Origin: Macrostomum lignano
Lineage: Eukaryota
Length of the DNA: 64,000 nucleotides
Direction: 5' to 3'
Assembly (NCBI GenBank): GCA_002269645.1
Contig: NIVC01001965.1
Span: forward strand, 301,560-365,559
Below, piece by piece: positions 30,339 through 60,114 of the stretch (position 1 is its first letter; every line of letters starts with the position of its first letter). Both the position numbers and the translations under genes were made by a program. The notes beneath the pieces are model-generated. The model saw only the letters and a list, made by a program, of their open reading frames with translations, did no database searches and was not told the DNA's origin.

Positions 30339-33300
30339 CTAGATTTCGCTCTCGTGCTTCGGAGGCGATTTCCTGGCATCGATGGTGGACATGCTGAAAT
30401 CGTTCACATTCTCGTCCATGATTTTGTCTTTTCGGCTTAGGCCGGTCTGCTCGAAGATAATGTCATTTAGAATCTGGAAAAAATGAGTTACAGTGGATGA
30501 GTTTCATTAGAAGTGGAACTAATAAATTAGCTTTCTCAAATCCTTTAAAAAAATCTACCATTCATAGTCATTTAACTAAGTTCATGTAGGTCCCCTTCTA
30601 GACATAGCTCGTAGAAAGACCAATACAAAAGCTATTCATATTGCCTTGGATTCTTACCAATCAGCAATGATTTGATTAAATAAAGACAACAGTCTAGCAG
30701 ACATAAAAAGCTTTGCCGCGCAGCGACGCCTCCCTCACTCCATTTTCTAACCCACTAGCCGCGCCGCGACACCCACCTCACTCCATTTCCTACACCTACT
30801 AGCCGCGCTGCGACACCCACCTCACTCCATTTCCTACACCCACTAGCCGCGCTGCGACACCCACCTCACTCCATTTTTTAACCCACTAGCCGCGCTGCAA
30901 TACCCACCTCACTCCATTTTCCAACCCACTAGCCGTGCGGAGACGCTCCACTTTTCTCACCCTCGTCGAGCCACAATCAAGACAGATAAAGAATCCTTAG
31001 TCTTGGAGCGAATCGTGGTGTATTGTGGTGTTATAAAGGATAAGAACACATTAAAGAATATTTTGTACTAATCTTAAGATATCTAGAAATTTATTAAGGT
31101 CAGTCTGTTAGGCTATTCAATCAACAATGAACAGCCTGAAGCCCTGGATTGACCCGCTTGTGAAGGAGGGGTTGAACACGGTTGCCCCACGTATCCGCGC
31201 ATGAAATCTTACATCGTCCTCTTCGCCGCCCTCCTCGTAGATGGCCGGATTGCGCCGGCCTGTGCGAGTCTCCTTGCGGGTCAGCTTGGATGCGCCAGAC
31301 TTGATCTGCCGAATAGGAGATTTGCGATGAGTTGAAGCCAATTTAAAAAGCTTAATTTCAAGTAAGTTTCAAGGCTCCTTTGTCACCTGGGGTCTGGGCC
31401 ACCTGATGGATGACTCTTATCACCTGGGCCATTTGAAGGCGTTTATCATCACCTGGGCCATTTGGGTCTTATCACCTGCGCCATTTAGAAGGCGGCTTCT
31501 ATCACCTGAACCCTTAACCGGACTCACTCACGTTTACAGTATCTTACTGCACTCACCGACTTCTCCAAATGCTCAGACGAGGCGGCGTCGCCTTCCGGCA
31601 CTGCCGGGCCGCGCGTCTCAATCACCTTGCTGGTGATCACCTGGCGGGTCTTCTTGCTGCGCACAATCTTCTTCGTGACAGTGTTGCCGTGCTCGTCAAC
31701 GTACGTCACTATTTCCTCCTCGGGCTCGCCGACTTGCTCGCTCTGCGATAGGATGGCAGTGGATTGCTAATCTAGCCAATACATGGGTGCAGGAATAGAA
31801 TGGATTGCTAATCTAGTCAACATGGACGAACCGATAGACAGGTTTCTAGCCAATATGGATAAAAAAACAGAATGAGTAAGATAATATGGAACATATGCGC
31901 CACTACATAACCAGTGACATGCATTTTATCGAATCTCCATTTAGAAAAGGATATTGCTATTTGGTTTACAGCATAATGCACTGGTGTAAAAAACTTAATG
32001 CTTGGTCAAAGGCAGCATGAGAATATCTGAATTGATAGAACTGCCCATTTCTTTCAGTTAAAAATATTGATTAATACTGCCATTTCGTTAACTGTAATCT
32101 ATATCCGTGTTGCAATGGCATACTTAAGTTTATGTTTATGTTTATGGTCATATATCAAATGCATGCAAAAACATGCATGTCATACTCGTGTAAACATAAA
32201 TATTAATAAGAATTTTCTGTTTTATACGTTTTTTTTAAAGAAGATTTCAAAATTCACAATCGCCTATTTACAGTAGTGACACTAATCTCCTCATTCTGCT
32301 GCTTCCGAGTCGCATCCGCTTGTTGCTGCTGCCGCTGCGATTCAACTTTTTCAACGTCCTTTCGGCGAATATAAAGACAATCATAGTTGAACAACAGAAT
32401 AGCTAACTCAGAACTAACCTTAGTTTTCCTAAATGGAATCTAAATAGGGAAATTCAAATCAACTGACCTCGGTGCGACTCTCCAGAACCGTGACCGACTG
32501 ACCCTCCGGGCCGCCAGCGTTGCCCCTCGGCTTGGGGCTGGGAGCTCGGATCTGGGGCTTGTTCTCCCTGATCATGTCGTATTTCTGGTCAACCGCCGGT
32601 AGGTTGGAGGCCTGCGCAATAGTTGAAAAATTGAGCAAGAAGAGTGAGTAGTCAGCATATTTTAAAAATACAATAGAGTTGGATAAATTATTGTGCAGTT
32701 CAAAGAAAACAAAGAAAATGAAAAGCATAAAAGCATACGTGAAATGAAGTGCTAAAGAAATCATGTGTGTCATAGCCAGTCTTGAGGGGTAAGGAAATGG
32801 AGTGGGGTGGGTGTCTCAGCGAGGCTTGGGCGGAGTGAGGTGTTTGTTAAAGCGAGTCGAGGGGTAAGGAAATGGAGTGGGGTGGGTGTCTCAGCGAGGC
32901 TTGGGCGGAGTGAGGTGTTTGTTAAAGCGAGTCGAGGGGTAAGGAAATGGAGTGGGGTGGGTGTCTCAGCGAGGCTTGGGGGAGTGAGGTGTTTGTTAAA
33001 GCGAGTCGAGGGGTAAGGAAATGGAGTGGGGTGGGTGTCTCAGCGAGGCTTGGGGGAGTGAGGTGTTTGTTAAAGCGAGTCGAGGGGTAAGGAAATGGAG
33101 TGGGGTGGGTGTCTCAGCGAGGCTTGGGGGAGTGAGGTGTTTGTTAAAGCGAGTCGAGGGTAAGGAAATGGAGTGGGGTGGGTGTCATAGCGAGCCTTGG
33201 AAGTGAGGAAGTTACCTTACATAAAGGTGGGTTGGTGTTTCAGCGAGACTTGAGTAGGGAAATGGTGTTGGATCAGGCTAGTTCACCACTAGTTAGCAGT

Positions 33301-36300
33301 GTGCGTGTTCGATTAATCAATCACTAAATCATTTTTTCAGTAGTTTTCTTTGAGCTTTCTTGATTTTCTTTACGAGCTAACCAGTGCCTGTTTGCATGTA
33401 TACTGTTACTGTGTTTTTTCTATGTTTGCACCAACTAGTGGAAAAAATGTGGAAATAGTTTCATTACAAGCTAGCATAAGAGGCAACGATTGGCATGCAG
33501 GGGGACAAAAGGCGGCGACAAGGATAAATATTTGATAAAATGGAAACCGATGTCGAGCTTGAAGCCAATAAGCTATAATTCCAGACGTACTCCGAGTAAA
33601 AAACAGTAAAGCAACCGAAAAGAAAGTGCAACAATTATTAAGCATGCAGTTCTGTGCTTAGATTTAGAAAGGAGTCTAAAAAGCAATTCGCGCCCCAAAC
33701 CCGTTTGGCGAGGCTGTCCCGGATCGAGTTCGGTTCGGCGTATTTGAAGCCTCGTTTTTTTGGCTTGCGCTGGAAAATCGTGATGCCATTGAGTGAATTG
33801 TGAACTCGTCCCCAGCTTGAATCAAATTAATATTGAACTGCTTGCGAGATCAATGTTATGCTTCTGCTCTAATACGAGTTACGGGCGTAGTCACGTTTTC
33901 TTTATTGGATCGCTTCTGTGAGGTGCATCTTTAGGGCGCAATCATTGGGGAGGGGGTGTCATCGATGAGGCTAGCACCAGAGCCAGAGGCGCCAGCAGCA
34001 CCAGTGGCGCCAGCAGCACTAGGCGCGCCAGCAGCACCAGTAGCGCCAGCAGCACCAGGGGCGCCAGCACCTCCAGTGGCGCCAGCAGCACTAGGCGCGC
34101 CAGCAGCACCAGGGGCGCCACAGCTACTGTAAAGGGGGCGCCCCAGATTTTGTCAGCCTATTAAAAGAGGGGGTGCCGTCCCCTGCCCCTCTCTAGCTAC
34201 GCCGGCCCCTGCTATGAGCGAGAATGCAAGAAAATGATGTTGCATCATCCGAACCTCCATAATGCCGGCCCTGCTACTCGGCTGGATGGAAGACTCGGGC
34301 GCCAGGCAGACAGGCGTCCAGTCCGGACCAGGTGGATAACGGAACGGCCGCTGTCCAAGATTCACGTCCAACGTCTGGTCTCGCATGGCAACAGTTGGAA
34401 AGAAGGACTCGCGCTCGAGCATGTCCTGCTGCAGACTGTAGGCCGGTCCGAACGGCTGGCCGTTCTTAGCGAACTGCAGTTCGCCATTGTTGAAATCGAA
34501 AAAGCAGCCAATGACGTCGCCTTTGGCGTAGGGCTCGCCGTAGGCTTCGATCTCGTCGTCGAATAGCTTCTTGCCCTGGTTGCCGGCCAGGCCGAAGCCT
34601 TCGTGGTCGGCGCCGTAGCCCCAGCCGTTGGCGTCGCGCCCGACGTCCAGCAAGCCGGACTCGGTGGTCCAGCCGACACGGCCGAGGCCGCCGGACTCCA
34701 GGGGCTCCGCCTCCCAGTAGAACCGGCCGCCCTCGCTGCCTTTCAGGCCCTGGAAGTGTTGGTGTTGCAGCGACTTTCTTAGTCATCTATTCAACTCGTT
34801 TACTGTTCTCTCTTAGTCTAGTTCAATCTGGTTCTCTCTCTCTCTTGCGCAGCTTTCTGATTGGCTCTTCAATTTTACCCCCTTTCTCAGTCCCGCACTC
34901 CACCCCCTCCTTTCTTATCTACGCCGAACCCGTAATTGATTTTAAACAAATAAACTTGTTTTGGGCCAAGTGCCTTAGGCACTGCCTGGGTTTTTAATCT
35001 TAGGCAGCCGCTACTTCCAATGGATTCTTCCACAGGCAGCCGCTATTTCCAGTGGATTCTTCCACAGGCAGCCGCTACTTCCAGTAGATTCTTCCACAGG
35101 CAGCCGCTACTTCCAATGGATTCTTCCACAGGCAGCCGCTACTTCCAATGGATTCTTCCACAGGCAGCCGCTACTTCCAGTGGATTCTTCCACAGGCAGC
35201 CGCTACTTCCAGTAGATTCTTCCACAGGCAGCCGCTACTCCCAAAGGATTCTTCCACAGACAGCCGCTACTTCCAGTGGATTCTTCCACAGGCAGCCGCT
35301 ACTCTCAAAGGATACAGAAGCGCACACATTATCACAGGAAGCTGTACTCACCTTGTTGGCCCGAACGCCCTGCCAACCAAAGCCCAGCTGGCCCTGCGCA
35401 GACAGCTGGTCGGGTCCCAGTTGCAGGCCCGGCCCGCTGGTGTCGTGCGGGTTTAACCGCCAGCTGCGTGGATTTTCCGAAGTCTGGTTGGCGAGCGCCA
35501 GGCCCACCGGACGCCAGGCTCCGCCGGGCGGATAGGCGAGCGGTCTGGACGGATCGTCGCCAAAGTTCCAGTCAGCTGCGGCGCCGTCGCGAAGGCAGGC
35601 GGCCGGATAAACAGCCTGCGGGCCGCCGGAGGGACCGTCGGCACCACGGGACTTCCTGTTACCGCCAGCAGTGCCTGTCGGAGTAAAGAAGTCGGCTGGC
35701 AGCTGGTGCGCGGGCCCTAGCTCTTTGCCGTTGACCGCGTAGGTGACGGTGCCGTTGTCGAGGTCCAGGTAGGCACCGACTATGTCACCAGTCATCAGCT
35801 GGACGCCGTATTGCTCGGAGACTCCATCTAGCATCTTCTGGGCGTGTCGGCCGGCCGGGTCGGTGCCAAAACCGCAGCCGTGGTTGTCCTGGGGGCGGGG
35901 GCGGGAGGAAGGCATTGGCTGATTTTCTATTATCCACTCTTCTCTACACCTCTCCTCTCGCTCCTATCTTCACCTCCCCGCTCCTATCTTCACCTCCCCG
36001 CTTCTATCTACACCTCCCCGCTTCTATCTACACCTCCCCGCTCCTATCTACACCTCCCCGCTCCTATCTACACCTCCCCGCTCCTATCTACACCTCCCCG
36101 CTCCTATCTACGCCTCCCCGCTCCTATCTACACCTCCCCGCTCCTATCTACACCTCCCCGCTCCTATCTACACCTCCCCGCTCCTATCTACACCTCCCCG
36201 CTCCTATCTACACCTCTCCGCTCCTATCTACACCTCCCCGCTCCTATCTACGAGTACATCCCTCCACCCCCTTGTAGTCCCCTAATTGGTTCCTCTCATT

Positions 36301-39300
36301 CCATCCTGGCTGCTCGTCTCACCCGTCCGAGGTTGAGATCGGCGTTGCCGTCCGCCCAGCCGACCCGTGCCTCCACCGGCTGGTCGGAGGGCCCGTCTCC
36401 CCGCACAGCGGTCTCGTAGTACCACTTGCCGCCAGCCGAGGCCCGGATGCCGCGGTCCGCCCGGCAGCCCTGCCAGTCGCGAACCCCGGCCGGGCAGGCG
36501 CCGGCGCAGCGCACGGGGTCCATGCCAGCGGCCAGGTAGGGGTCGGCGTCTGATGGATTCATCTGCCAGCGAATCGGTCTGTCAACGTCCAGCTCGGGCC
36601 GGCGGTCGTACTGCTCTCGTCGGTTCACCGGCGGCAGCAGCGGCGCGCCCATGCCGGCGCCCTGTCGGTTGGACATCGCGTAGGTGTCGTCGTTGGTCAA
36701 GCCCGAGGTGCCAGCGCCGCCGGCGCCCGTTCGAGCCTCACGGTTGTAGGCGTCGTCTGCGCGAATGATGATTTGAAAATGTTTAGATTTTGTTTTAACA
36801 ATTTTAATAGAAACTGTTTGAGACAGTTAAACTAAAGTTCATTCATTAGTCCCGGATATCCGAACGCCGAACTCATTGACCTTTCTCTCTTAAAGATTTC
36901 GCACCGAGTTGACCTCGGCTGACCTTTTCGTTTTTCATTTGGTCCATTCAGTGGACCAAAGGACCAGCTATGTGACCTTAGTTAAACCCTTTGCGTCCCG
37001 CACTTGTGTGACCTCAATCGATCCCTGTTCTCCTCAGTCCCGCATTTGTGTGACCTCAATCGACCCCTGTTCTCCTCAGTCCCGCACTGTGTGACCTCAA
37101 TCGACCCCTGTTCTCCTCAGTCCCGCACTGTGTGACCTCAATCGACCCCTCCCTTACTAAACTGCTTGATATATTGCAGAGAATCACAGGCTGAAAGTGC
37201 ATCAATCGGATTTGTAATAGCGTAGTCGCCTAAGCTGAAAATTATAAGCACGGCAGTCAAGCGTTTCTTACAAAGAATTCATCGCACAAATAGCAGGCTG
37301 TGGAATATTCGTATGCTTCTATCGTAAAAAATTTCAATGGGCATTAATAATTTATTCGTCTACTGAAGCAAGCAGATCTTAATATTATAGCAGTTAAATT
37401 CATGCCACATCAAATATTTAAATGACAATTAAAGTGACCAGTTTGTACTTTTATTTCTCCTTTTTTTAGAATCATAGACCTTTGAACAGAGCATCTGGAC
37501 TAAACAGTCCAGACGTTCGCACTACTGGCTTGAATTGTATTGCCCAAATTGATATTATGCCACACCGCCATTGCGAGTGTGTTAGACAGAAAAAAACATT
37601 AAAGTACCAGAGTTAGGCATTGGTTAGCAATATCAAAATATATTACAAATATATTCTACAAGTTTTTTAAATTAAAAACTATCAACAGACCGTCGAATCC
37701 TTCGTCTACTTTAGCTTTTGTAGGGCCGCCTGCAGTGAAATTAAAAGTGCATTGCAATAATAATAGTACAATTGTGTGGATGTGCCAGCGATTCACTGGG
37801 CCTGCTGATCAAAGTTAATTAATAAATAGTGCTTTTAAAGTACGTAAAGAACTTTTTAAATCGATGCTTTTAACGTTACACATGCTATTTAGAAATTACT
37901 TGTTAGTTACTAGAATTAGACTATTTGCATAGTGCTGATGGCTGACACCCTGGCTCTCTGACACCCTGGCTCTCTGACACCCTGGCTCTGACACCCTGGC
38001 TCTGACACCCTGGCTCTTTGACACCCTGGCTCTGACACCCTGGCTCTGACACCCTGGCTCTGACACCCTGGCTCTCTGACACCCTGGCTCTGACACCCTG
38101 GCTCTGACACCCTGGCTCTTTGACACCCTGGCTCTGACACCCTGGCTCTGACACCCTGGCTCTGACACCCTGGCTCTCTGACACCCTGGCTCTCTGACAC
38201 CCTGGCTCTCTGACACCCTGGCTCTCTGACACCCTGGCTCTCTGACACCCTGGCTCTGACACCCTGGCTCTTTGACACCCTGGCTCTGACACCCTGGCTC
38301 TGACACCCTGGCTCTTTGACACCCTGGCTCTGACACCCTGGCTCTGACACCCTGGCTCTTTGACACCCTGGCTCTTTGACACCCTGGCTCTGACACCCTG
38401 GCTCTGACACCCTGGCTCTCTGACACCCTGGCTCTCTGACACCCTGGCTCTGACACCCTGGCTCTTTGACACCCTGGCTCTGACACCCTGGCTCTGACAC
38501 CCTGGCTCTGACACCCTGGCTCTGACACCCTGGCTCTGACACCCTGGCTCTTTGACACCCTGGCTCTGACACCCTGGCTCTGACACCCTGGCTCTGACAC
38601 CCTGGCTCTTTGACACCCTGGCTCTGACACCCTGGCTCTTTGATACCCTGGCTCCCTGGCACCCTGGCTCTCTGACACTCTAGCTCTCTGACACCCTGGC
38701 TCTCTGACACCCTGGCTCCCTGACACCCTGGCTCTCTGACACCCTGGCTCTCTGACACCCTGGCTCTGACACCCTGGCTCTGACACCCTGGCTCTCTGAC
38801 ACCCTGGCTCCCTGACACCCTGGCTCTCTGACACCCTGGCTCTGACACCCTGGCTCTTTGATACCCTGGCTCCCTGGCACCCTGGCTCTCTGACACTCTA
38901 GCTCTCTGACACCCTGGCTCTCTGATACCCTGGCTCCCTGGCACCCTGGCTCTCTGACACTCTAGCTCTCTGACACCCTGGCTCTCTGACACCCTGGCTC
39001 TTTGACACCCTGGCTCCCTGACACCCTGGCTCTCTGACACCCTGGCTCTCTGACACCCTGGCTCTCTGACACCCTGGCTCTCTGACACCCTGGCTCTTTG
39101 ATACCCTGGCTCTCTGACACCCTGGCTCTCTGACACCCTGGCTCTCTGACACACTGGCTCTCTGACACCCTGGCTCTCTGACACCATGGCTCTCTGACAC
39201 CCTGGCTCTCTGACACCCTGGCTCTCTGACACCCTGGCTCCCTGACACTCTGGCTCCCTGGCACCCTGGCTCTCTGACACCCTGGCTCTTTGATACCCTG

Positions 39301-42300
39301 GCTCCCTGGCACCCTGGCTCTGACACCCTGGCTCTGACACCCTGGCTCCCTGACACCCTGGCTCTCTGACACCCTGGCTCTCTGACACCCTGGCTCCCTG
39401 ACACCCTGGCTCCCTGGCACCCTGGCTCTCTGACACTCTAGCTCTCTGACACCCCGGCTCTGATGCTCTGCCAATCCAACTCTAAAAGTAGCTGCCTTGT
39501 CAGAAAGATTACCATGTATTTGCTTGATGGTCAGCGTAGGAGCTGAAAATGCGACAGATATGAACATCGGCAAAAGCAGCAATGCGTACCCTTCTTCTTG
39601 AAGCTCTTGCGCATGTCAGGGGTAACTTGCACCTCCTGGTAGGCGCCCGACTGGTCGTTCTGCGAGTCCCGGATGCCGGTGCCCCACTTGCCCTTGAAGG
39701 TGCCGGGAATGTGCGGCTTCTGCGGTTTCTCGGCGGACTTCAATCTGAAGATCATTCAATTTTGCCAACATTATTTGCTACTTGCTTACTATAAGTAGGT
39801 TAAATGCGTTTTCAACTCGAAAACAAAAATACTATTAGAAGATTAAATCAATAATTGAATTGTTTCTAAAAAAAGAGTTATATAAATAGACCAGTAGGAA
39901 CTTTTGTTCATGAGCACAATAAGCTAACCTGAAGAATCCGTGATGCTCAACCACAGCCCGCCAGAGTCGCTTAGCCAGCTTCGATGAGGCGCACTTGAAC
40001 TCAAACAGAGTCTCCGACTTGGGGTCGCGCTCGTTATCCCCGGTGCGAATTGACACCTTGAGCGTGCTGCCCTTGTAGGACACTTTGAGAATCTTCGGCC
40101 AGGAGAAGCGGTTAATCCGGAGGTTGTTGCGGTACACCAGAACGCCGCCGTGGTAAACTCCAAGGAGGACCTCCTCGCCAGAGGCGTCCTTAGACTCGTG
40201 CAAATCGACGCCGTACATGGCGAGCTTCTTGGCGTTCCGCAGGAAGTGCAGGTCGGCCTCCTCCGGAGTCATGCGCTGGTGCGTGCGGTGCAGCTCGCTG
40301 ACTCGCTCGGCCAGCTCGGCGTTGTTTCGGTACTCCTCCGGACAGAACGGGCAGTCCTGGGCGGCGAAGTTTAAACTAGGAAAATCAATTGCCAACTCTT
40401 TCCATCTTGAGAGGGATAATACCGGATAAATGGGGATATTCTAGATCAGGGGTTGGCGAAGCCTCTCTATCCGGCCATTGGGTCCTCGGAAACTTCACGA
40501 TAGCAATTCGGTCTGCCCAGGGTTTGTGTCTCTTCTCAGCTGTCTTCTCTCAAATCTCTGTCCCGCAGTCATCCGCTATGTTCTCTACCTGACCCCTGTT
40601 CTAGATCCTTATTGAGCCTTTGTTTATTGACATGTCGAGGTACTACATGAGCTGTAGCAATTCGATAAAAAGTCAATCAAGCGAGCCCTGACTTTCTCAT
40701 CGTCAGCTCTGCGCTTACAGACTTACATTCAAGTACACCAGCGAGTTCATCTTCTCGTCCAACGGATCGAAATCGCCAACTTCAGACTGCAGCACGTAGC
40801 TGCCCAGGATGATGTAGGTGATGAAACTGCAAGGCAGCAGCTCGGCCATGAGGTTCTGCCGAATCTGCAGCGCCATGTAGTAGCGGGTGAGATTCTCCCG
40901 CAGATTCTCCGGGTCGGGCGGGTAGAACTTCACCATGAACTCCAGCTTCCACTCGTTCTCTGGCGGAAACAAATTTGAGAAAAAGAGATATCGAATCAAC
41001 TGGAATGCTTGATGACATAGTGTGGGTCTTAACTCGTGGGTCCTGCTGCTACCCTCCGTGATACTTCAGTGCCCCTGCAGCAATACCCTCCGTGATAATT
41101 CAGTGCCCCTGCAGCAATACCCTCTGAGCTACTTCAGTGCCCCTGCAGCAATACCCTCTGAGCTACTTCAGTGCCCCTGCAGCAATACCCTCTGAGCTAC
41201 TTCAGTGCCCCTGCAGCAATACCCTCTGAGCTACTTCAGTGCCCCTGCAGCAATACCCTCAGAGCTACTTCAGTGCCCCTGCAGCAATACCCTCTGAGCT
41301 ACTTCAGTGCCCCTGCAGCAATACCCTCCGTGCTACTTCAGTGCCCCTGCAGCAATACCCTCCGTGCTACTTCAGTGCCCCTGCAGCAATACCCTCCGTG
41401 CTACTTCAGTGCCCCTGCAGCAATACCCTCCGTGCTACTTCAGTGCCCCTGCAGCAATACCCTCCGTGCTACTTCAGCCACCTTCAACTACCCCTCCAGT
41501 ACGCAGTTAGGCTTGAAACAAAGTTGTCTAGTAAGCAACATGCCTCATTCGAATAAAGCCATCTATAGCATACGAAGGTCGCAGATGAAACATATATAGC
41601 GGTGGAAATTGTCGAAAATAGACTTATAGAAATTCTAAACTGTTTGGTCAAAGATTTGCTTATAAGATTTGGCCAGGAGAAGAAGTGCCCTTACCGACGC
41701 TTTAATTTAAAGCCCTTGCTTGTGTGTCTTATGTTCCATGCTTCAATTATAGGTTTCCTGACTTTTGTAGCGGTCTGACTAGCTGTTTCAGGCAACTATT
41801 AGAGAATGTAAGCAAACCGCATGGCCTAGTGATCTCTTTACCAAAATCTTGCAGTAATGCTTAACTGAAATAAAAATTTGGGGCTTGTGATAGCAATTTA
41901 CCGAAATTTCTTTTCCATGGCTGAAGCAATGATACCCATATTCAGAAAGTGGAAGCAGACAGCTTAAGGCTGACTGCAGCCAAACCAAAATTATGAGATA
42001 CAACAAGCAGCCTGAATATGTCTGCCAGCAGCCTCCGCCCAAGGCCTTAGTCACCACTTCGCGTACGACTTGTGGAAGGAACGCACACAAAGGGCGGTGG
42101 GGGGTAGACAGTGACTAAATACCGCCCCCCCACACACATCAAGCCTCTTCTCTCAGACACGGCTTCAGAATTTTTTTGTGCTGTGTGCCAGGCCGTTGAC
42201 TAAAGCTGCTCCGACGGCTGCCGGGGCTCTGCTGGCCGCGGGTTTGTCACTAAACTGCGCAGAAGCTGACTCGAATAGTTTCTTATTTTGCATTTAGCTA

Positions 42301-45300
42301 TTTAGCTCGTAGTAACCGTCACTTATTAGTTGAACAGTCATAATCAGCAATTAGAATGGCATTGTGGGAAAATAAATCTGCTTAATACAAAGAAAGAATC
42401 TGTTGATAACAGCCGTGAATAAAAGTGTGGTGAATGAGACACTAAGTGTTGCGTATTAAATAGTTGACATGATGAATGAACAGTTGACATGCGGAATGAA
42501 CCGTTGATAATGATGAAGGAACTGCTGAAAATGATGAATGAACAGTTGACATGAGGAATGAACAGTTGACATGAGGAATGAACAGTTGACATGCGGAATG
42601 AACCGTTGATAATTATAATTGAACAGTTGATAATTATGAATGAACAGTTGATAATTATGAATGAACTGTTGGCAATGATGAATGAACTGTTGGCAATGAT
42701 GAATGAACAGTTGATAATGATGAATGAACAGTTGGCAATGATGAATGAACAGTTGATAATTATGAATGAACTGTTGGCAATGATGAATGAACAGTTGATA
42801 ATTATGAATGAACTGTTGGCAATGATGAATGAACAGTTGATAATTATGAATGAACTGTTGGCAATGATGAATGAACTGTTGGCAATGATGAATGAACTGT
42901 TGGCAATGATGAATGAACTGTTGGCAATGATGAATGAACAGTTGATAATGATGAATGAACAGTTGATAATGATGAATGAACAGTTGGCAATGATGAATGA
43001 ACAGTTGATAATGATGAATGAACTGTTGATAATGATAAAGGAACTGTTGATAATGATGAAGGAACTGTTGGCAATGATGAATGAACAGTTGATAATGATG
43101 AATGAACAGTTGACATGAGGAATGAACAGTTGACTTGCGGAATGAACCGTTGATAATGATGAATGAACAGTTGATAATGATGAATGAACAGTTGATAATG
43201 ATGAATGAACAGTTGATAATGATGAATGAACAGTTGATAATGATGAATGAACAGTTGATAATGATGAATGAACAGTTGATAATGATGAATGAACAGTTGA
43301 TAATGATGAATGAACAGTTGATAATGATGAATGAACAGTTGATAATTATGAATGAACAGTTGATAATGATGAATGAACAGTTGATAATGATGAATGAACA
43401 GTTGATAATGATGAATGAACAGTTGATAATGATGAATGAACAGTTGATAATGATGAATGAACAGTTGATAATGATGAATGAACAGTTGATAATGATGAAT
43501 GAACAGTTGATAATGATGAATGAACAGTTGATAATGATGAATGAACAGTTGATAATGATGAATGAACAGTTGATAATGATGAATGAACAGTTGATAATGA
43601 TGAATGAACAGTTGATAATGATGAATGAACAGTTGGCAATGATGAATGAACCGTTGATAATGATGAATGAACTGTTGGCAATGATGAATGAACCGTTGAT
43701 AATGATGAATGAACAGTTGATAATGATGAATGAACAGTTGGCAATGATGAATGAACAGTTGGCAATGATGAATGAACAGTTCCTGTCCTTCGACCCTTAG
43801 CACTCCAGAGTCAGCCAACTCTTTGTTATTCGAACCCTAGCATTTAGTGTTCACAAATATGAAAAAACGACAACAACAATTAGGCTGTTAGCAAAAGAGG
43901 GAGCTGCAAATTCTAAAATATATCTATTAATAGTAAACATGGGCGGGCGAAACTACTCGGTTCGAACTTGAAGCAGAGTTGTTGCTGCTGCTGCTGCTGC
44001 AACTTCATGCTTGTGTGTGCGTGTGTGTAGCATTGCAAAAACACCAATCCAAAGTCTGCGAGAGAGGCAGAGAAGAGAAAAGAAGGACCCAAAGGTCAGG
44101 AGAGCCATAGATGGGGGTTGGGCAGAGTGTGCAATGGAGTGTGCAATCAAGTGTGGCCAGTCTCTCTTAATCGGACAGGCTATAGCTGCTAAAATGCTAT
44201 TGCAGAGTGAGTTTCCAGAGAGTGAGAGGAGAGAGAGAGAGAGAGAGGCGGACCCTCAGGCTACAAACAGAGAAGAATATACCAGCCCAAGTCAAGCCTT
44301 ATGTTACAATAGAAATGTGCATTAGTCTGGAGTATTGTAGATTTTTATAAAACTATAACTATAGCGATCTATCTATTATAGCGCTAGGCTATTTGTTTAG
44401 CAGCTAGACCAAAGATTGATAGAGGGAAAACACCTGAGCAAATGTTATATGAATTCTTTGTTTAAGGAAATTTTTTATTAACAGGGGCGAATTTATAACA
44501 AACAGAAATCTTATCACTAAAAAAATTGAATTCTTCACACCGATCGAGCTGTTTTGTTATACTCGACCTACGATGGTAATTTTAACAATCAAAACAACCA
44601 CAGGATATCAACTGATAAGCACAAGCCCGCTGTCACCTCCAGTCGGACGGAAGGGCATTTTATAATAGCTGTTCAGAATTTCTAAGAATCAGCTCTGCGG
44701 TATCTTAGACATGGGGGGGCAGGTTTACGAGCATTGCTTGTACATAGTATAAGGCACCCATAGTCTAGCATTAGCATAGCTTGGCTCTGTATATGCAATA
44801 ACCCGAAACCATTAGTTTGCTCAAAGCAGAGAGATAACAGGAGACGAGACACCCACTATGCGTGAAGCGGGCGCAACCCGAAAGGAGAGACGAAAGAAGC
44901 AGTTTAATATGCGACACGACGCCAGATTAAATGTACACCCCTCCTCGCTCTCCTTACTCTAATTCATTACTTACTCTCTGTTATGCTATCGGCGTGTTTT
45001 GTTAGCTCCGCTCTTGCTTTGCGCGCGCAAAACCGGCGGCAGAGAAGCAGGCAGCAGGAGTCATAAACTGCATGCTGAGACGCTTTCAGACCGCTCTATT
45101 CTATATATATATATAGCTAAATTTGTTGCTGTCTTTCTATAAGGGGCGTCGAATTAAATAAAACAAAATAATCAATCAACCAACTCACTGCCAATCTGCT
45201 TGCCGAGCTTCTTTTCGTTATTAAGCCAGAACTGAAACAAATGCAGTTTTGGTGCAAACCTGTTAGACAGAATCTAGAATGCATAGATCGATACAATAGT

Positions 45301-48300
45301 TTGTACGTGTATTTTAGAGTCGGTAGACTCTAGAGCCTAATAGTTTCTGAAGTCTATAGAGGGATACCCGAGTCTATAGTTTAGCCTCTAGAGACTACAG
45401 ATGATTTATGGAATCTGATGATTATGATGATTTACGTCTATAGATTCTATAATCTCTAGTTGATATGAGTCACTACATGTATCCCAGAATATCTTGATAG
45501 ATCCTACAGTCTATCGATAAAATTGCAACGAAACTTTTCTCTAGATGGATTCTAAAGACTCTAGATGATTCTAAAGACTCTAGATGGATTCTGAAGACTC
45601 TAGATGGATTCTAAAGACTCTAGATGGATTCTAAAGACTCTAGATGGATTCTGAAGACTCTAGATGGATTCTAAAGACTCTAGATGATTCTAAAGACTCT
45701 AGATGGATTCAGAAGCCTCTAGATGGATTCCGAAGCCTCTAGATGGATTCAGAAGCCTCTAGATGGATTCTAAAGACTACAGATGGATTCTAAAGACTAC
45801 AGATGGATTCTAAAGACTCTAGATGGATTCCGAAGCCTCTAGATGGATTCTAAAGACTACAGATGGATTCTAAAGACTACAGATGGATTCTAAAGACTCT
45901 AGATGGATTCCGAAGCCTCTAGATGGATTCTAAAGACTCTAGATGGATTCTAAAGACTCTAGATGGATTCTAAAGACTCTAGATGGATTCTAAAGACTCT
46001 AGATGGATTCTAAAGACTCTAGATGGATTCCGAAGCCTCTAGATGAATTCTAAAAAAGAGTATAGATGGATTTTAAAGCCTCTAGGTGAATTATAAAGAC
46101 TATAGATTAATTATAAAGACCATAGATGAATTCTAAAGACTATAGATGAATTCCGAAGCCTCCAGATGGATTCTAAAGACTATACATGGATTCAGAAGCC
46201 TCTAGATGGATTCCGAAGCCTCTAGATGGATTCAGAAGCCTCTAGATTAATTTTAAAGCCTCTAGATGGATTCCGAAGCCTCTAGATTAATTATAAAGCC
46301 TCTAGATGGATTCAGAAGCCTCTAGATTAATTATAAAGCCTCTAGATGGATTCAGAAGCCTCTAGATGGATTCAGAAGCCTCTAGATGGATTCAGAAGCC
46401 TCTAGATGGATTCAGAAGCCTCTAGATGGATTTTAAAGCCTCTAGATGGATTCCGAAGCCTCTAGATTAATTATAAAGCCTCTAGATGGATTCAGAAGCC
46501 TCTAGATGGATTCAGAAGCCTCTAGATGGATTCAGAAGCCTCTAGATGGATTCAGAAGCCTCTAGATGGATTTTAAAGCCTCTAGATGGATTCCGAAGCC
46601 TCTAGATTAATTATAAAGCCTCTATACGAATTCTAGATAACTCCTAGGGCTGTCAGATAATTTCAAGACTATTTAGGCAATTTCTAAAATTTTCAGGGTT
46701 TTAGTCTAACCAGAATCCCTAGATTCGTTTTTCGTCTATAGATCTAATATCAGTGGCTACATGGACATAGACTAGATGCCTACTAGAGCGATCTCTGAGT
46801 CAAGGGTCTCAAGATCTATAGACTGCTGAGCTAGTTCAATTAAAGGCACACTCTAATTGAAGTGTTAAATGCACTCACAAACATCTGGCTGGAGTCGCGG
46901 AAGCACAGGCCGAAGTACTCCTTCTCGTGAAGGCCCAGCGCCACGCAGACCTCGTCAAACAGATCCGTTGGCTTGCCATTGGGCTGTGTTGAGTGGGAAA
47001 ATAGAGGAAAAATAATAAAATTACCAATTACATAAAATATATCCCTGTACATTTTTTGCTTTATAAAGTTACTAACGCTACATATCGGCGTTTGGAGCTA
47101 AATAAGTATCATGTAGTTTAATTGAACGCGGAACTGCGTTGTTTAAAATAAGCAAGGAATCTTTGAACATTGGGAGTAAAGTATAACAATTTCCATTCCT
47201 AGATTTACATGCAGTTGGACTATGTGAAAAACTGGACAGATTTTAATGCTGAAATATGCGACTTAAGCCCAGACAGATCATTCTGTAACTGCGCATTTTC
47301 AGCCCCGCATAGCAGTCCAAAGCTAATTAGCTATTTTATTAGCTATTTTATTTTATTGCACCAAAATAAATTAGACATTATTGATGGACATATGAAAATT
47401 AGAAGATTAGATTCTTATAAAATAAAAGACCACTTTAAAAAATACAAAACAAAAGCAGAATTTAGTTTTGCTCAGTTCTGGTCTCAAATTTTACTTTAGA
47501 AATGACTCTAGAGAAAATGAAATTTTTATTTCTAAGGCTTGTAGCCCAGTGGTCAGAGCGTCGGACTCACGACTGAAACGTCGCGGGTTCGATTCCCGAC
47601 CCACTTGGGACTATTTGTGTCATTGAGCAAGACACTTAACTCTGCATTGCTTCAGTTCACCCAGCTGTAAAATGGGAGCCAGCATTAGCTGGGGTAATTG
47701 AGGCTGTGTGTGGCGACCCCCAGTCCTTGGACTGAGCAGTTGTAAACAGCCTTCAGCAGCCTTCAGTGAAGGTGTGTAATTCATTAATATTATTATTAGG
47801 CACTAAATTGACAAAATCTCACCTTCTGGAGTTCATTATTGGAGGGTGACTACGTTCAAAGCAAATTTGGATTTTTTAAACGGATTTTTCAATTAATGGC
47901 TCTTTTCACGGCGCTGAGTGGGGTTTGGCCATAGACAAATCCGTCCAGACAAAACACTGCAGAGACAGGAGCAGCTGCAATTTTGCCGCAACTTTGCTTG
48001 CTTGCCGGTCTCCGGCAGCAGTTCATGAAAAAGCAGCTTGATAAACTTTTGAGCGCAGCTCGGACAAAACACGAGATTATACTTACTATATCTTGTCCCC
48101 TAGAGATAAACTGGACACTCACATCAACATCGAATGTGTGCACCGAGCCGTCCAGCATCACCACCTCGATGGGCTTCAGCTTGCCGGAGGGCTTGGCCGG
48201 CCGGCTGGCCGTGTTGTAGGACTGCTGCGACTGCATAGTGCCGGACTGATAAAACGGCACGCCCTTGTCCCGCAGGGTATAATAGTCCTTCTTGGACATT

Positions 48301-48392
48301 GTGCTCTCGAACTCGGCATTCCGACCAGTGGCACCCCGGCCGTCGAGGGGCAGAGTGGACGACTGCATGGTGGCGCTGCCGTGATCAGACAT
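30339..48392 (-). CDS. Band 4.1/coracle-like FERM protein fused to two DDX1-type SPRY domains, 14 exons, 1114 aa
   Basis: Exons 48392-48123, 46983-46879, 45231-45189, 40959-40727, 40356-39929, 39744-39590, 36756-36323, 35888-35352, 34749-34255, 32611-32468, 32358-32272, 31742-31557, 31305-31213, 30473-30339. All junctions are GT-AG, phases match, total 3345 nt. FERM motifs: VVMLDGS, EKEYFGL, FWLNNEK, VKFYPPDP, AKKLAMYGVDLH, FSWPKILKVSY, LWRAVVEHHGFFR. SPRY motifs: WQMNP...WQGCRA...KWYYE...RVGW...GDIVGAYLD...NGKELG...YPAACL...NFG, plus a second full copy. Confidence 0.88.
30720..30945. repeat. 44 bp unit array (same family as 29.7 kb), last intron of the FERM gene
   Basis: About 5 copies. Confidence 0.94.
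32785..33200. repeat. 75 bp unit array containing the reverse complement of the 44 bp unit core
   Basis: GGAAATGGAGTGGGGTGGGTGTCTCAGCGAGGCT versus the reverse complement of the 30.8 kb unit GGAAATGGAGTGAGGTGGGTGTCGCAGCGCGGCT (31/34 by eye). Confidence 0.93.
33988..34125. repeat. GC-rich 16-18 bp GCGCCAGCAGCACCAG array
   Basis: About 7 degenerate copies. Confidence 0.85.
35003..35305. repeat. 32 bp unit CAGGCAGCCGCTACTTCCAATGGATTCTTCCA array (intron inside SPRY2)
   Basis: About 9 copies. Confidence 0.95.
35935..36255. repeat. 20 bp unit CTCCTATCTACACCTCCCCG array (intron inside SPRY1)
   Basis: About 15 copies. Confidence 0.96.
37000..37150. repeat. 41 bp unit TGTGTGACCTCAATCGACCCCTGTTCTCCTCAGTCCCGCAC, about 4 copies
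   Basis: Direct reading. Confidence 0.9.
37940..39460. repeat. 14/16 bp unit TGACACCCTGGCTC(TC) array
   Basis: About 100 copies. It explains the spurious ORFs at 37.9-39.6 kb. Confidence 0.98.
41045..41480. repeat. 34 bp unit GCTACTTCAGTGCCCCTGCAGCAATACCCTCTGA array
   Basis: About 12 copies. Confidence 0.96.
42470..43780. repeat. 21 bp unit ATGATGAATGAACAGTTGATA array
   Basis: About 60 copies. Confidence 0.97.
45538..46635. repeat. 20 bp unit TCTAGATGGATTCTAAAGAC array
   Basis: About 54 copies with variant blocks. Confidence 0.97.
47536..47760 (+). mobile_element. tRNA-derived SINE with a MIR-like CORE domain (family S2)
   Basis: A box TAGCCCAGTGG and B box GGTTCGATTCC, then TGTGTCATTGAGCAAGACACTTAACTCTGCATTGCTTCAGTTCACCCAGCTGTAAAATGGG, which resembles the remembered MIR core TGTGACCTTGGGCAAGTCACTTAACCTCTCTGTGCCTCAGTTTCCTCATCTGTAAAATGGG. 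Confidence 0.8.
47908..48072 (-). mobile_element. Family F repeat, truncated copy 2 (FERM intron 1)
   Basis: Reverse complement of the core of the 1448-1666 and 54946-55180 copies. Confidence 0.85.
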
Positions 48393-56000: not shown

Positions 56001-56982
56001 GCTGAGCTGGCGGCTGAGGCTGCTGAGCTGGCGGCTGGGGCTGCTGAGCTGGCGGCTGGGGCTGCTGAGCTGGCGGCTGAGGCTGCTGAGGCGACGAAGA
56101 GGCAGAGTTAGCTCCGTTAGCAGAATTTGGAGCGCCATTTCTACTACGATTAGTTGAGCGCCTAGCGTCGCGCTGATCAATCTCGGCGCACAGCTGGTCG
56201 ATTAAAGATTTAGCCAGGTCGATCTGGTCTTGGGTGCCGCACAGCGTCACCAGCCGGTTCTCCTCGTTGAGCCGGCCGCCGCCGCCGCCGCCGCGTTCGA
56301 CGTCGATTTTGCACCGGGACTGAGTCATGAGATCGCGCACATTCTGGCCGCCCCTGCCAATCAGCGGGCCGATGTAGCGCGAAGCCAAACGAAACTCGGC
56401 GGTCTCTTTGCGCGGCACCGCGGCTATGAGCCGACGCAGCTCCTCCTCGGCGGCGTGAACGCAGCGCGCCTCGCCGCGTATTCGGACAGGCTCCGTCGCT
56501 GAGGCCGACCTGCCGTCGGCTTGCGGGCCGTCACCGCCGTTAGCAGCCCGATTGACAAATGTAATTTTAGTCTTAGTAGTCTGCTGCAGTTGACGGATAG
56601 CGGCGCCGTCTTTGCCAATAATAGCGCCAATTGCTTCGCGCGGAATCGACATCAGCGCCACCTTGTAGGTGTCGGCCGTGGCCACTGTCTGATCGCCGGC
56701 CTCGGCTGGTCCGTCGGCATCGGCGGCGGCATCGGCGGCAGAGTCGCCAACTGCTCCAGCAGCGGAGTCTAGCACCTGACGGCGCTGCTTCTCAGCATAG
56801 CCAATGCCGACAGAGTGCAGCTGGACTGGGCGCTGGGTTCGATAGGTGAGGTACCAAAACACGGCACAGCCGGCCAGCACCAGGCAGTGGTAGGCCGGGC
56901 TGTCCATACCAGCAATAGTTACGAGGAGGAGTGAGGAGTGATCACGATCTGGAATAAGTTGGCGAGTTAGAGAAGCTTGCAT
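50095..56982 (-). CDS. TDRKH: Tudor and KH domain-containing protein (TDRKH/Papi orthologue-like)
   Basis: N-terminal TM (CLVLAGCAVFWYLTY), KH1 (IPREAIGAIIGKDG), KH2 (YIGPLIGRGG), extended Tudor (VSAV...FYL...GELVAAYYEPDQTWQRARVV...DCLDYGD...LPFQ), then exon 54791-54566 (AIRCTL...EFQRLTKCATYEP...ELRRQG). The probable last exon is 50249-50095 (phase 1). A one-base frame discrepancy near 55930 separates the KH and Tudor frames. The true start may be MDSPAY near 56907. Confidence 0.88.
51335..51494. repeat. 23/46 bp GAGTAGCTAGTCACTAGTAATCA-type array, also present at 54515-54560
   Basis: The same unit family flanks both sides of the Gypsy element. Confidence 0.9.
51495..54514 (+). mobile_element. 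Defective Ty3/Gypsy LTR retrotransposon, 3'-truncated
   Basis: Putative 5' LTR TGTTG...TAACA (51495-51731) and PBS TGGCGACGAGGA (51732-51743, complementary to the tRNA-Ser(GCU) 3' end as remembered). Gag has two CCHC knuckles. Only the protease C-terminal ILGMDFL remains, off frame. RT has YSVLD and YQDDII, RNase H has CDASKDGLG and ADTLSR, and integrase stops at LHENHPG. There is a frameshift near 53110 and an in-frame TAA near 53127. No integrase core or 3' LTR. Confidence 0.95.
51732..51743 (+). promoter_or_regulatory. Primer-binding site of the Gypsy element
   Basis: TGGCGACGAGGA immediately after the LTR-terminal CA. Confidence 0.8.
54900..55246 (+). mobile_element. Family F repeat, copy 3 with an internal inverted arm
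   Basis: 54970-55018 is the reverse complement of 55196-55245. Confidence 0.85.
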
Positions 56983-59978: not shown

Positions 59979-60114
59979 GAACTGGAAAATTCCCACCTCG
60001 CCAGTGCAGTTCGCAGCGAAATCTGCACGGTTTTCGAGTGCAGCGGCCTTCTGCTTCAGCTGTCCATGAGCAACATTTGCATCATTCATATTCTCAATGG
60101 GAAGCAGAATTGTA

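What the first reader, a model, noticed from the sequence alone, without database searches (positions are those of the whole stretch)
34255..48392. Band-4.1 FERM protein fused in frame to two tandem DDX1-derived SPRY domains
Seen: the FERM exons and a divergent FERM-adjacent exon (ends phase 1 at 39590) splice in frame to exon 36756-36323 (begins phase 1). Two complete SPRY domains follow, then a five-exon tail, giving one 1114-aa ORF. No separate start, and no helicase DEAD or RecA motifs, are visible around the SPRY exons. Established, from memory: the SPRY insert of DEAD-box helicase DDX1 reads WQMNPYDR...EWHGCRATKG...KHYYE...CRVGW...LDLGTD..GFGFG...KK......YGE.F...D.IGC.LD...G...FSKNG..LG.AF......LFPAC.L...E..FNFG...FKFPP. 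SPRY1 (WQMNPSD...DWQGCRADRG) and SPRY2 (GWQGVRANKG...LDVGRD..GWGYG...KK...YGEPY..GDVIGCFFD...FAKNG...FRYPP) follow it motif by motif. Canonical 4.1/coracle proteins carry a spectrin-actin-binding and/or 4.1 C-terminal domain there instead. Inference: a membrane-cortex adaptor captured and duplicated the interaction module of an RNA helicase of the RTCB tRNA-ligase complex, and could tether RNA-processing partners to junctions or cortex. I cannot verify whether this architecture is already catalogued.
Basis: partly seen in the sequence, partly recalled or inferred. Interest (0 to 1): 0.8.

Follow-up and report, generated by a model that had tools for sequence, protein, structure and literature searches.

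The report
Flatworm 4.1-type FERM protein with two SPRYs
This is a real, already-annotated but unstudied gene of the flatworm Macrostomum lignano. It joins a band-4.1-type membrane-binding FERM domain to two SPRY domains most like the one in the RNA helicase DDX1, and the same layout occurs in trematodes, tapeworms and monogeneans.

Summary
The core observation holds. On the minus strand, 14 GT-AG exons (48392 to 30339) translate exactly to GenBank protein BOX15_Mlig026758g1 of Macrostomum lignano (1098 aa). Its order is FERM_N/M/C, a degenerate FERM-adjacent stretch, a linker, two SPRY domains and a roughly 200-aa tail.

One mRNA carries the whole architecture. A related species has 3.5-kb transcript-like contigs with a single 1088-aa ORF.

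FERM plus two SPRYs recurs in trematodes, cestodes, monogeneans and Macrostomum. All hits below E=1e-30 are flatworm. Several are mis-named "DDX1, partial".

Both SPRYs are closest to the DDX1 SPRY (PDB 4XW3, E 1e-23 and 1e-30, against 1e-9 to 1e-11 for the next families). In a neighbour-joining tree they group with DDX1 SPRYs in 85% of bootstraps. No helicase motifs are present, and no 4.1 C-terminal domain is detectable.

The likely function is a membrane-cortex adaptor with two protein-binding SPRY modules. The proposed link to the RTCB tRNA-ligase complex is unsupported, because the DDX1 SPRY is dispensable for assembly of that complex. This is a lineage-specific variant of a known family, of moderate interest.

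The parts
48123..48392 (-). Exon 1: start codon at 48392-48390, N-terminal unstructured region and the start of FERM_N
   Evidence: 100% tblastn match to P0005 residues 1-90. GT donor.
46879..46983 (-). Exon 2: FERM_N (PNGKPTDLFDEVCVALGLHEKEYFGL...)
   Evidence: Pfam FERM_N hit. 100% match to P0005 residues 91-125.
45189..45231 (-). Exon 3: 43-nt exon (FWLNNEKKLGKQIG), end of FERM_N
   Evidence: Found with a 4.1 probe. AG/GT splice sites. Required for the exact P0005 translation.
40727..40959 (-). Exon 4: first half of FERM_M
   Evidence: Pfam FERM_M hit. 60% identity to the 4.1R probe. Part of the exact CDS.
39929..40356 (-). Exon 5: end of FERM_M plus FERM_C (PH-like lobe)
   Evidence: Pfam FERM_C 5e-23 and FERM_M. 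Part of the exact CDS.
39590..39744 (-). Exon 6: degenerate FERM-adjacent-like region, ends in phase 1
   Evidence: No Pfam FA hit. An FA HMM I built from 51 canonical 4.1 proteins scores six flatworm sequences at 12.8-23.4 bits, above all 600 shuffles, whose maximum is 10.3.
37691..37729 (-).
   Evidence: Present in P0005 and in the relative's transcript P0006, absent in the paralog P0007 and in trematode P0008. AG/GT splice sites. Required for the exact CDS.
36323..36756 (-). Exon 8: linker plus the N-terminal half of SPRY1 (RWQMNPSD...WQGCRADRG...RVGWA)
35352..35888 (-). Exon 9: C-terminal half of SPRY1 plus the start of SPRY2 (SWRLNPHD...GWQGVRANK)
   Evidence: Pfam SPRY hit. Domain limits come from my own SPRY HMM: SPRY1 is P0005 residues 483-702.
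34255..34749 (-). Exon 10: the bulk of SPRY2
   Evidence: Pfam SPRY 8e-16. SPRY2 is P0005 residues 707-900. Best PDB match by sequence is the DDX1 SPRY, 1.4e-29.
33701..33769 (-). Optional 69-nt cassette exon (RKPKKRGFKYAEPNSIRDSLAKR). In frame, and not in the annotated isoform.
   Evidence: AG/GT splice sites. The motif RKxKG[FW]xYxDP is conserved in P0007, P0001 and trematode P0008, and absent from P0005 and P0006.
32468..32611 (-). Tail exon (ASNLPAVDQKYDMIRENKPQIRA...)
31557..31742 (-). Tail exon with the conserved strand-rich motif EEIVTYVDEHGNTVTKKIVRSKKTRQVITSKVIE
   Evidence: Predicted beta strands, at low confidence.
31213..31305 (-). Tail exon (…TRKETRTGRRNPAIYEEGGEEDD)
   Evidence: Weak hhalign resemblance to the 4.1 CTD core, P=0.009.
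30339..30473 (-). Last coding exon (ILNDIIFEQTGLSRKDKIMDENVNDFSMSTIDARKSPPKHESEI) and the stop codon
   Evidence: 100% tblastn match. Part of the exact CDS.

Best explanation
This is one protein-coding gene of Macrostomum lignano (GenBank BOX15_Mlig026758g1, 1098 aa).

**Shown: the architecture.**
- The N-terminal third is a band-4.1/coracle-type FERM domain, followed by a degenerate FERM-adjacent stretch.
- After a linker of about 70 residues come two tandem SPRY domains of the DDX1 type.
- They are followed by an alternatively spliced, mostly low-complexity tail of about 200 aa.
- This FERM plus two-SPRY layout is a family found across Platyhelminthes.

**Inferred: the function.**
- The FERM domain would anchor the protein to the plasma membrane, to phosphoinositides and to the cytoplasmic tails of transmembrane proteins, as in 4.1/coracle.
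- The two SPRY beta-sandwiches would act as protein-protein interaction modules that recruit still unknown partners to the cell cortex or to junctions. They sit in the position that canonical 4.1 proteins use for their variable region and C-terminal domain.

**Inferred: the origin.**
- In the flatworm stem lineage a DDX1-type SPRY module was inserted into a 4.1-type gene and duplicated in tandem.
For: **One gene.**
- The exact CDS has 14 exons, all with GT-AG introns.
- It is annotated as a single gene of the same 18,054-bp span in GCA_002269645.1.
- Two Logan contigs of about 3.5 kb, from SRR28338163 and SRR28338164, carry one uninterrupted 1088-aa ORF. That ORF is 75-84% identical and collinear with all the annotated window exons, so it is transcript-like.
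- A 3975-nt Logan contig encodes the 1105-aa homolog in the Dicrocoelium cluster.

**Domains.**
- Pfam finds FERM_N, FERM_M, FERM_C and two SPRY stretches.
- The best FERM matches are 4.1/coracle proteins, at 45-52% identity.

**Family.**
- FERM plus two SPRYs occurs in Dicrocoelium, Echinostoma, Calicophoron, Mesocestoides (two copies), Schistocephalus, Cichlidogyrus and Macrostomum (at least two paralogs).
- N-terminally truncated models in Clonorchis and a second Cichlidogyrus protein keep FERM_C plus two SPRYs.
- SPRY-only partial models exist in Paragonimus, Schistosoma japonicum, Heterobilharzia and Protopolystoma.
- Of the 14 library hits with E<1e-30, the ten whose names I looked up are all flatworm. 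Three of the rest carry a FERM domain.

**DDX1-type SPRY.**
- By sequence against the PDB, 4XW3 scores 7.7e-23 (SPRY1) and 1.4e-29 (SPRY2). The next best families score 3e-11 and 6e-9.
- The best single-domain Foldseek hit is 4XW3, with TM 0.66-0.68, rmsd 3.0 A and 32-33% identity.
- The next tier in the exhaustive search is mostly proteins carrying the DDX1 helicase region.
- NJ bootstrap support (300 replicates): 85% for DDX1 plus flatworm SPRYs against other SPRYs, 61% for the SPRY1 clade and 63% for the SPRY2 clade.
Against: - No experimental data exist for localisation, partners or phenotype, so the function rests on domain analogy.
- The FA region is weak and the 4.1 C-terminal domain is not detectable. 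The protein may therefore behave differently from 4.1/coracle.
- The SPRY1+SPRY2 sister relationship has only 41% bootstrap support. The NJ tree rests on 169 columns and a sample biased towards close hits, so 'derived from DDX1' and 'duplicated after capture' are not established.
- The structure models have low to moderate confidence (pLDDT 44.7 and 63.2).
- I could not test whether flatworms also keep a canonical 4.1 or an intact DDX1.
Confidence: 0.8

Rival explanations
1. One reading: the SPRY tandem keeps DDX1's partner specificity, so the protein tethers components of the RTCB tRNA-ligase complex, or other RNA-processing machinery, to junctions or the cortex.
For: - The SPRY domains are of the DDX1 type.
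- Kellner & Meinhart 2015 propose that the DDX1 SPRY is a protein-interaction platform with a conserved surface patch (PMC4555926).
Against: - Deleting the DDX1 SPRY has no effect on recruitment to the tRNA-ligase complex. The C-terminal helix of DDX1 is the sole assembly motif (PMC13586351).
- The SPRY function is stated to be unknown (PMC8668186).
- The flatworm SPRYs are only 34-37% identical on average to DDX1 SPRYs, so conserved partner specificity cannot be assumed.
- Nothing in the protein matches a known RNA-binding domain.
Confidence: 0.07
2. Gene-model artefact: a 4.1-like gene and a separate SPRY gene lie next to each other and were joined only by in-frame chance and by automatic annotation.
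For: - Joining two exons in frame has a one-in-three chance.
- Some database entries (P0001, P0127, P0311) carry only the SPRY part.
- Methionine codons exist in exon 36756-36323.
Against: - Transcript-like contigs of 3.5-4 kb hold the whole ORF uninterrupted in a Macrostomum relative and in a Dicrocoelium-cluster protein.
- The same order of domains was predicted independently in more than ten species of four flatworm classes.
- Read-through past the donor at 39590 hits a stop after 17 codons.
- The SPRY-only entries start without a methionine or are short partial models.
Confidence: 0.03
3. The SPRY pair does not descend from the DDX1 gene. It comes from another member of a wider 'DDX1-like' SPRY group, which also occurs in protist and fungal multi-domain proteins. 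Alternatively, the two SPRYs were acquired separately rather than by tandem duplication.
For: - The exhaustive search also finds non-helicase proteins with similar SPRYs, combined with kinase, EF-hand, La or HET domains.
- The flatworm clade has only 41% bootstrap support, and its position among DDX1 SPRYs is unresolved.
- SPRY1 and SPRY2 are 33-45% identical to each other, which is about as far apart as each is from DDX1.
- The introns interrupt the two repeats at non-equivalent positions.
Against: - Those other multi-SPRY proteins and KPC1 fall outside the DDX1 plus flatworm group in 85% of bootstraps, and are only 25-29% identical on average.
- Both repeats share DDX1's N-terminal W-x-[MLI]-[NS]-P-x-D extension.
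- The point-estimate tree has SPRY1 and SPRY2 as sisters.
Confidence: 0.2

Closest known systems
Protein 4.1 / coracle family (EPB41, EPB41L1-3, Drosophila Cora)
   Same: - The three-lobed FERM domain is 45-52% identical to 4.1 proteins of many phyla, and these are its best FERM matches.
- The FFRL boundary is followed by a weak FERM-adjacent-like stretch.
- The layout is FERM, then a variable region, then a tail, with alternatively spliced cassettes.
   Different: - There is no Pfam FA, SAB or 4.1 C-terminal domain.
- My own CTD HMM scores the tails no better than shuffled sequences.
- Two SPRY domains occupy the middle of the protein, and none of the listed canonical 4.1 proteins has one.
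SPRY insertion domain of DEAD-box helicase DDX1 (PDB 4XW3)
   Same: - It is the best solved-structure relative of both SPRYs by sequence (7.7e-23 and 1.4e-29) and the best single-domain fold match (TM 0.66-0.68, rmsd 3.0 A).
- Both repeats share DDX1's W-x-[MLI]-[NS]-P-x-D N-terminal extension.
   Different: - The domains are not embedded in a RecA1 domain. No DEAD or Helicase_C domain is present.
- There are two tandem copies.
- SPRY2 has an insertion of about 10 residues (ADHEGFGLAGNQ) relative to DDX1.
- Identity to DDX1 SPRYs is only about 35% on average.
Ryanodine receptor SPRY1-3 and other multi-SPRY proteins
   Same: Several SPRY beta-sandwiches lie in one chain. RyR chains top the Foldseek list by E-value when the tandem is the query.
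   Different: The two-domain superpositions are poor (rmsd about 19 A, 16-19% identity). Sequence E-values are 12 to 20 orders of magnitude weaker than for DDX1.
Other FERM-plus-effector fusions (PTPN3/4, FARP1/2, MYLIP, myosin VII/X); named from my own knowledge, not tested here
   Same: They follow the same general logic: a FERM membrane anchor is combined with a different effector or interaction module.
   Different: None of them combines FERM with SPRY. Their FERM domains belong to other subfamilies.

Membership tests
Protein 4.1 / coracle family | Three-lobed FERM domain (FERM_N, FERM_M, FERM_C) of the 4.1 subtype | tested here: met
   Pfam FERM_N 1e-17, FERM_M 2e-20 and FERM_C 3e-22. Outside the flatworm family, all the best hits are 4.1/coracle proteins at 45-52% identity.
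Protein 4.1 / coracle family | FERM-adjacent (FA) regulatory region directly after FERM_C | tested here: inconclusive
   Pfam FA (PF08736) is not hit at E<=1. My own FA HMM scores six flatworm sequences at 12.8-23.4 bits, above all 600 shuffles, whose maximum is 10.3.
Protein 4.1 / coracle family | 4.1 C-terminal domain (PF05902) | tested here: not met
   No Pfam hit in the first gene model, in its tail or in P0001, nor in the trematode, cestode and monogenean homologs. My own CTD HMM scores the real tails no better than shuffles. The only trace is a short hhalign match, P=0.009, probability 4.5%.
Protein 4.1 / coracle family | Spectrin-actin-binding domain (PF04382) | tested here: not met
   No Pfam hit. 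According to the abstract of PMC3791450, a recognisable SAB is also lacking in the invertebrate 4.1 proteins identified so far, so this absence says little.
DDX1 (DEAD-box helicase 1) | DEAD-box helicase core (RecA1 and RecA2 domains) | tested here: not met
   No DEAD or Helicase_C domain in Pfam. A phmmer search with a DDX1 helicase region finds nothing in any flatworm family member. The database names 'DDX1, partial' for the Clonorchis, Cichlidogyrus and S. japonicum proteins are therefore misnomers.
DDX1 (DEAD-box helicase 1) | SPRY domain of the DDX1 type | tested here: met
   Here there are two copies, and they stand free of any helicase.
DDX1 (DEAD-box helicase 1) | C-terminal helix that recruits DDX1 to the tRNA-ligase complex (PMC13586351) | tested here: not met
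   A phmmer search with residues 301-813 of a DDX1 (P0003), which run to its C-terminus, finds no match in the flatworm proteins. This is not a dedicated test of the roughly 45-residue helix on its own.
SPRY domain superfamily (PF00622) | SPRY beta-sandwich domain | tested here: met
   Pfam SPRY 1e-30 with two stretches. Two full-length domains are found by my own HMM in every complete family member. The predicted fold is strand-rich and superposes on 4XW3.

The most novel reading that the evidence does not exclude
The FERM plus two-SPRY protein is the only 4.1/coracle ortholog left in flatworms. It would then be a shared derived character of the phylum: the SPRY tandem replaced the canonical C-terminal domain as the partner-binding end of the septate-junction or tegument scaffold. 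That would make it a flatworm-specific cortical organiser present in all the major parasitic classes. A more speculative version adds that it still binds a DDX1-SPRY ligand and so couples ribonucleoprotein cargo to the cortex.
Probability: 0.25. Interest if true: 0.55.

Novelty: new variant of a known kind. Interest (0 to 1): 0.4.

Why it matters
- If the protein is the flatworm counterpart of 4.1/coracle, a core junction and cortex scaffold was rebuilt in a whole phylum. That phylum includes schistosomes, liver flukes and tapeworms. The result would be a conserved, lineage-restricted cytoskeletal adaptor, worth testing in tegument and epithelial biology.
- It provides a natural free-standing version of the DDX1-type SPRY domain. 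The ligand of that domain is still unknown, so partner hunting with the flatworm tandem could shed light on DDX1 itself.
- On the practical side, several database entries named 'DDX1, partial' should be renamed.

Tried and rejected
1. **Tail as a diverged 4.1 C-terminal domain.** By eye, TYVDEHGNTVTKKIV and ETRTGRRN..EEGGEEDD..LNDII resemble TYKTEKDGVVETRIERKMVITSEGDDIDHD..LA.AI. Pfam gives nothing. An HMM built from 48 canonical CTDs scores the real tails no better than shuffles. hhalign gives only P=0.009 and probability 4.5%. I left this as inconclusive and do not claim it.
2. **First gene model.** My first model (1124 aa) contained an unsupported exon at 32358-32272 and read through the donor at 31213. 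I corrected it against P0005-P0008.
3. **First bootstrap run.** The first bootstrap run gave 0% support for the flatworm clades, because the M. lignano fragment P0137 was mislabelled as a non-family sequence. I redid it with correct labels.
4. **Full-length AlphaFold model.** It was too poor to use (pLDDT 44.7). Only the SPRY tandem model was searched.
5. **Profile search for more family members.** The word-index search with a family profile returned only six hits. It added schistosome members but could not map the full distribution. Planarians (Tricladida) and taeniid tapeworms were neither found nor excluded.
6. **Literature.** Searches for FERM+SPRY in flatworms, for the locus tag, and for 'SPRY domain containing protein' in Schistosoma found no study of this family. 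The only trace is a proteomics table listing an S. mansoni 'SPRY domain containing protein' and a 'Band 4.1-like protein' in exosome-like vesicles. Their identity with this family is unverified.
7. **RNA genes.** Rfam and tRNA scans of the window found nothing.


Full report
**What is in the sequence**

The window is eukaryotic DNA, rich in tandem repeats. On the minus strand, open frames with FERM_N, FERM_M, FERM_C and SPRY signatures lie between about 48.4 kb and 34.2 kb. I read the splice junctions directly.
- The exon 39744-39590 ends in phase 1.
- The exon 36756-36323 begins in phase 1.
- The exons 35888-35352 and 34749-34255 continue in phase 0.

A first model of 14 exons gave an intact 1124-aa ORF.

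**Identity of the gene**

A homology search with that model returned Macrostomum lignano protein BOX15_Mlig026758g1 (P0005, 1098 aa; FERM_N, FERM_M, FERM_C and SPRY). It aligned at 94% identity by BLASTP and at 98% in the multiple alignment.

I then corrected my model, adding a 39-nt microexon, dropping one unsupported exon and adding the true last exon. The CDS has these 14 exons:
- 48392-48123
- 46983-46879
- 45231-45189
- 40959-40727
- 40356-39929
- 39744-39590
- 37729-37691
- 36756-36323
- 35888-35352
- 34749-34255
- 32611-32468
- 31742-31557
- 31305-31213
- 30473-30339

This CDS translates exactly to P0005. P0005 is encoded on NIVC01001965.1 of assembly GCA_002269645.1, in a gene of 18,054 bp, the same span as in the window. 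The feature is therefore real, is not a product of chance, and is already annotated as one gene.

**Corrections to the observation**

1. Between the FERM-adjacent-like exon and the first SPRY exon lies a 39-nt microexon (37729-37691, GGPTKAKVDEGFD). It is present in the annotated protein and in a relative's transcript, and absent in the paralog P0007 and in the trematode homolog.
3. The tail holds a further in-frame cassette (33769-33701, RKPKKRGFKYAEPNSIRDSLAKR). Its motif is conserved in the M. lignano paralog and in the trematode Calicophoron, but it is skipped in P0005 and in the relative's transcript. It is probably alternatively spliced.
4. The product is 1098 aa, or 1121 aa with the cassette, rather than 1114 aa.

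**Is it one mRNA?**

Protein P0006 is 75% identical by BLASTP and 80-84% identical in alignments. It is encoded on two Logan contigs of 3,521-3,522 nt from runs SRR28338163 and SRR28338164. Each contig holds one uninterrupted ORF of 1088 aa with short flanks. The ORF is collinear with every annotated window exon, including the microexon. A contig that lacks all 13 introns is a transcript.

A 3,975-nt Logan contig likewise encodes a 1105-aa member of the Dicrocoelium cluster. Read-through of the donor at 39590 meets a stop after 17 codons. The artefact hypothesis, two genes joined by annotation, is therefore very unlikely.

**The family**

I ran an exhaustive HMMER search of 1.84 billion representative proteins with the SPRY tandem. 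It gave 14 hits below 1e-30. The ten whose names I looked up are all flatworm, and three of the rest carry a FERM domain in my local phmmer check.

Pfam or local phmmer shows FERM together with two SPRYs in these members:
- Trematodes: Dicrocoelium, Echinostoma and Calicophoron.
- Cestodes: Mesocestoides (two copies) and Schistocephalus.
- Monogenean: Cichlidogyrus.
- Macrostomum: at least two paralogs.

N-terminally truncated models in Clonorchis and in a second Cichlidogyrus protein keep FERM_C plus two SPRYs. SPRY-only partial models exist for Paragonimus, Schistosoma japonicum, Heterobilharzia and Protopolystoma.

The architecture thus predates the split between Macrostomorpha and the parasitic Neodermata. 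Three entries are named 'DDX1' or 'DEAD box helicase 1, partial'. No family member has any helicase region, so these names are misnomers.

**Are the SPRYs DDX1-like?**

- **Sequence against the PDB.** Each SPRY matches the human DDX1 SPRY (4XW3) best, at 7.7e-23 for SPRY1 and 1.4e-29 for SPRY2. The next families (RyR, RanBP9/10, Ash2L) score 3e-11 and 6e-9. Both repeats start with DDX1's W-x-[MLI]-[NS]-P-x-D extension.
- **Next tier of hits.** After the flatworm family, the exhaustive search is dominated by proteins that carry the DDX1 helicase region after the SPRY. The named examples are DDX1 of nematodes, a copepod and a sea slug.
- **Tree.** I built an NJ tree from 113 SPRY domains over 169 columns. 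All SPRY1 copies form one clade (61% of 300 bootstraps) and all SPRY2 copies another (63%). The two are sisters in the point estimate (41%). The split between DDX1 plus flatworm SPRYs on one side, and KPC1 plus protist or fungal multi-SPRY proteins on the other, has 85% support.
- **Identities.** SPRY1 against SPRY2 is 33-45%. Either repeat against DDX1 SPRYs is 34-37% on average, with maxima of 40-45%. Against the outgroup the mean is 25-29%.
- **Fold.** An AlphaFold model of the tandem (pLDDT 63) superposes best, as a single domain, on 4XW3, with TM 0.66-0.68 and rmsd 3.0 A. RyR chains rank first by E-value only through poor two-domain alignments.

In short, 'DDX1-type SPRY' is well supported. 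'Derived from the DDX1 gene and then duplicated' is the simplest reading, but it is not resolved.

**Relation to protein 4.1**

The FERM domain's nearest relatives are canonical 4.1/coracle proteins, at 45-52% identity. These carry FA and CTD domains, and vertebrate ones also carry SAB.

In the flatworm protein Pfam detects none of these three domains. An FA HMM of my own scores the region after FFRL weakly, but above all 600 shuffles. A CTD HMM does no better than shuffles, and hhalign gives only a marginal short match.

The protein therefore has a 4.1-type FERM domain with a vestigial FA region, but it fails the CTD criterion. I file it as a variant of the 4.1 kind, not as a canonical member.

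**How it most likely works**

- **Shown:** the domain order, its conservation across flatworms, the stronger conservation of SPRY2 (40-71% identity to the window copy) than of SPRY1 (32-54%), and the cassette exons in the linker and the tail.
- **Inferred from what is established for 4.1/coracle FERM domains and for SPRY domains as protein-binding modules (PMC4555926):** the FERM domain anchors the protein at the membrane, on lipid and on transmembrane-protein tails. The SPRY tandem recruits unknown partners to the cortex or to junctions.

The DDX1 SPRY is dispensable for recruitment to that complex, which depends solely on the C-terminal helix of DDX1. The function of the SPRY is stated to be unknown (PMC13586351 and PMC8668186).

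**Novelty and verdict**

The gene and its architecture are already in public databases for many flatworms. I found no paper that describes or studies them. This is an ordinary case of domain shuffling in mechanism, but it is a phylum-wide, unstudied variant of a central cortical adaptor. Interest is moderate.

- Whether flatworms still have a canonical 4.1.
- Whether flatworms still have an intact DDX1.

Noticed in passing
window 37691-37729 (-): A 39-nt in-frame microexon lies inside the 2.8-kb intron between the FERM-adjacent-like exon and the first SPRY exon. It is included in the annotated protein and in a relative's transcript, and absent from the paralog. It is probably an alternatively spliced cassette.
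   Followed up: yes
window 33701-33769 (-): A 69-nt in-frame cassette exon (RKPKKRGFKYAEPNSIRDSLAKR) is missing from the GenBank model. Its motif RKxKG[FW]xYxDP is conserved from Macrostomum to the trematode Calicophoron.
   Followed up: partly
window 37942-39461, 42462-43781, 45539-46635, 41050-41477, 35959-36251, 35002-35303: The introns are packed with long tandem arrays: 16 bp x 99, 21 bp x 63, 20 bp x 55, 34 bp x 13, 20 bp x 15 and 32 bp x 9. Several of these arrays produce stop-free spurious ORFs of up to about 500 aa, some of them in several frames.
   Followed up: partly
window 30342-30353 (-); P0005, P0006 and P0007 C-termini: The Macrostomum copies end in -HESEI or -HESDI, which looks like a class I PDZ-binding motif (S/T-x-hydrophobic). 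The Calicophoron homolog ends differently.
   Followed up: no
window 34560-34600 (-), SPRY2: SPRY2 carries an insertion of about 10 residues (ADHEGFGLAGNQ) relative to the DDX1 SPRY. It is conserved in most but not all flatworm members. It could be a family-specific binding loop.
   Followed up: no
public entries GAA30691.2 (Clonorchis), KAL3319268.1 (Cichlidogyrus), P0311 (Schistosoma japonicum): Members of this FERM-SPRY family are named 'ATP-dependent RNA helicase DDX1' or 'DEAD box helicase 1, partial', although they have no helicase domain.
   Followed up: yes
window 7917-9347 (+): A single-exon ORF of 476 aa carries a rhodopsin-family 7TM receptor domain (Pfam 7tm_1, 4e-18).
   Followed up: partly
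window 25329-25781 (-): An ORF or exon encodes a fibrinogen C-terminal globular domain (Pfam Fibrinogen_C, 6e-12).
   Followed up: no
window 51835-54548 (+): A retrotransposon remnant upstream of the gene. One ORF has gag and a zinc knuckle, and a second, separate ORF has RT and RNase H. The coding region is interrupted between the two ORFs.
   Followed up: no
window 55876-56982 (-): A KH-domain protein gene (Pfam KH_1, 3e-28) with a C-terminal PAQQPQP repeat. It corresponds to the KH_1 gene annotated upstream of the FERM-SPRY gene on the GenBank contig.
   Followed up: partly
window 47893-48072 (-) and 59706-60155 (-): Intron 1 of the gene shares a dispersed repeat with a region about 12 kb upstream. 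The translated stretches are similar: ...ELLPETGKQxKLRxNCSxSCLCSVLSGRICLWPNPTQR.
   Followed up: no
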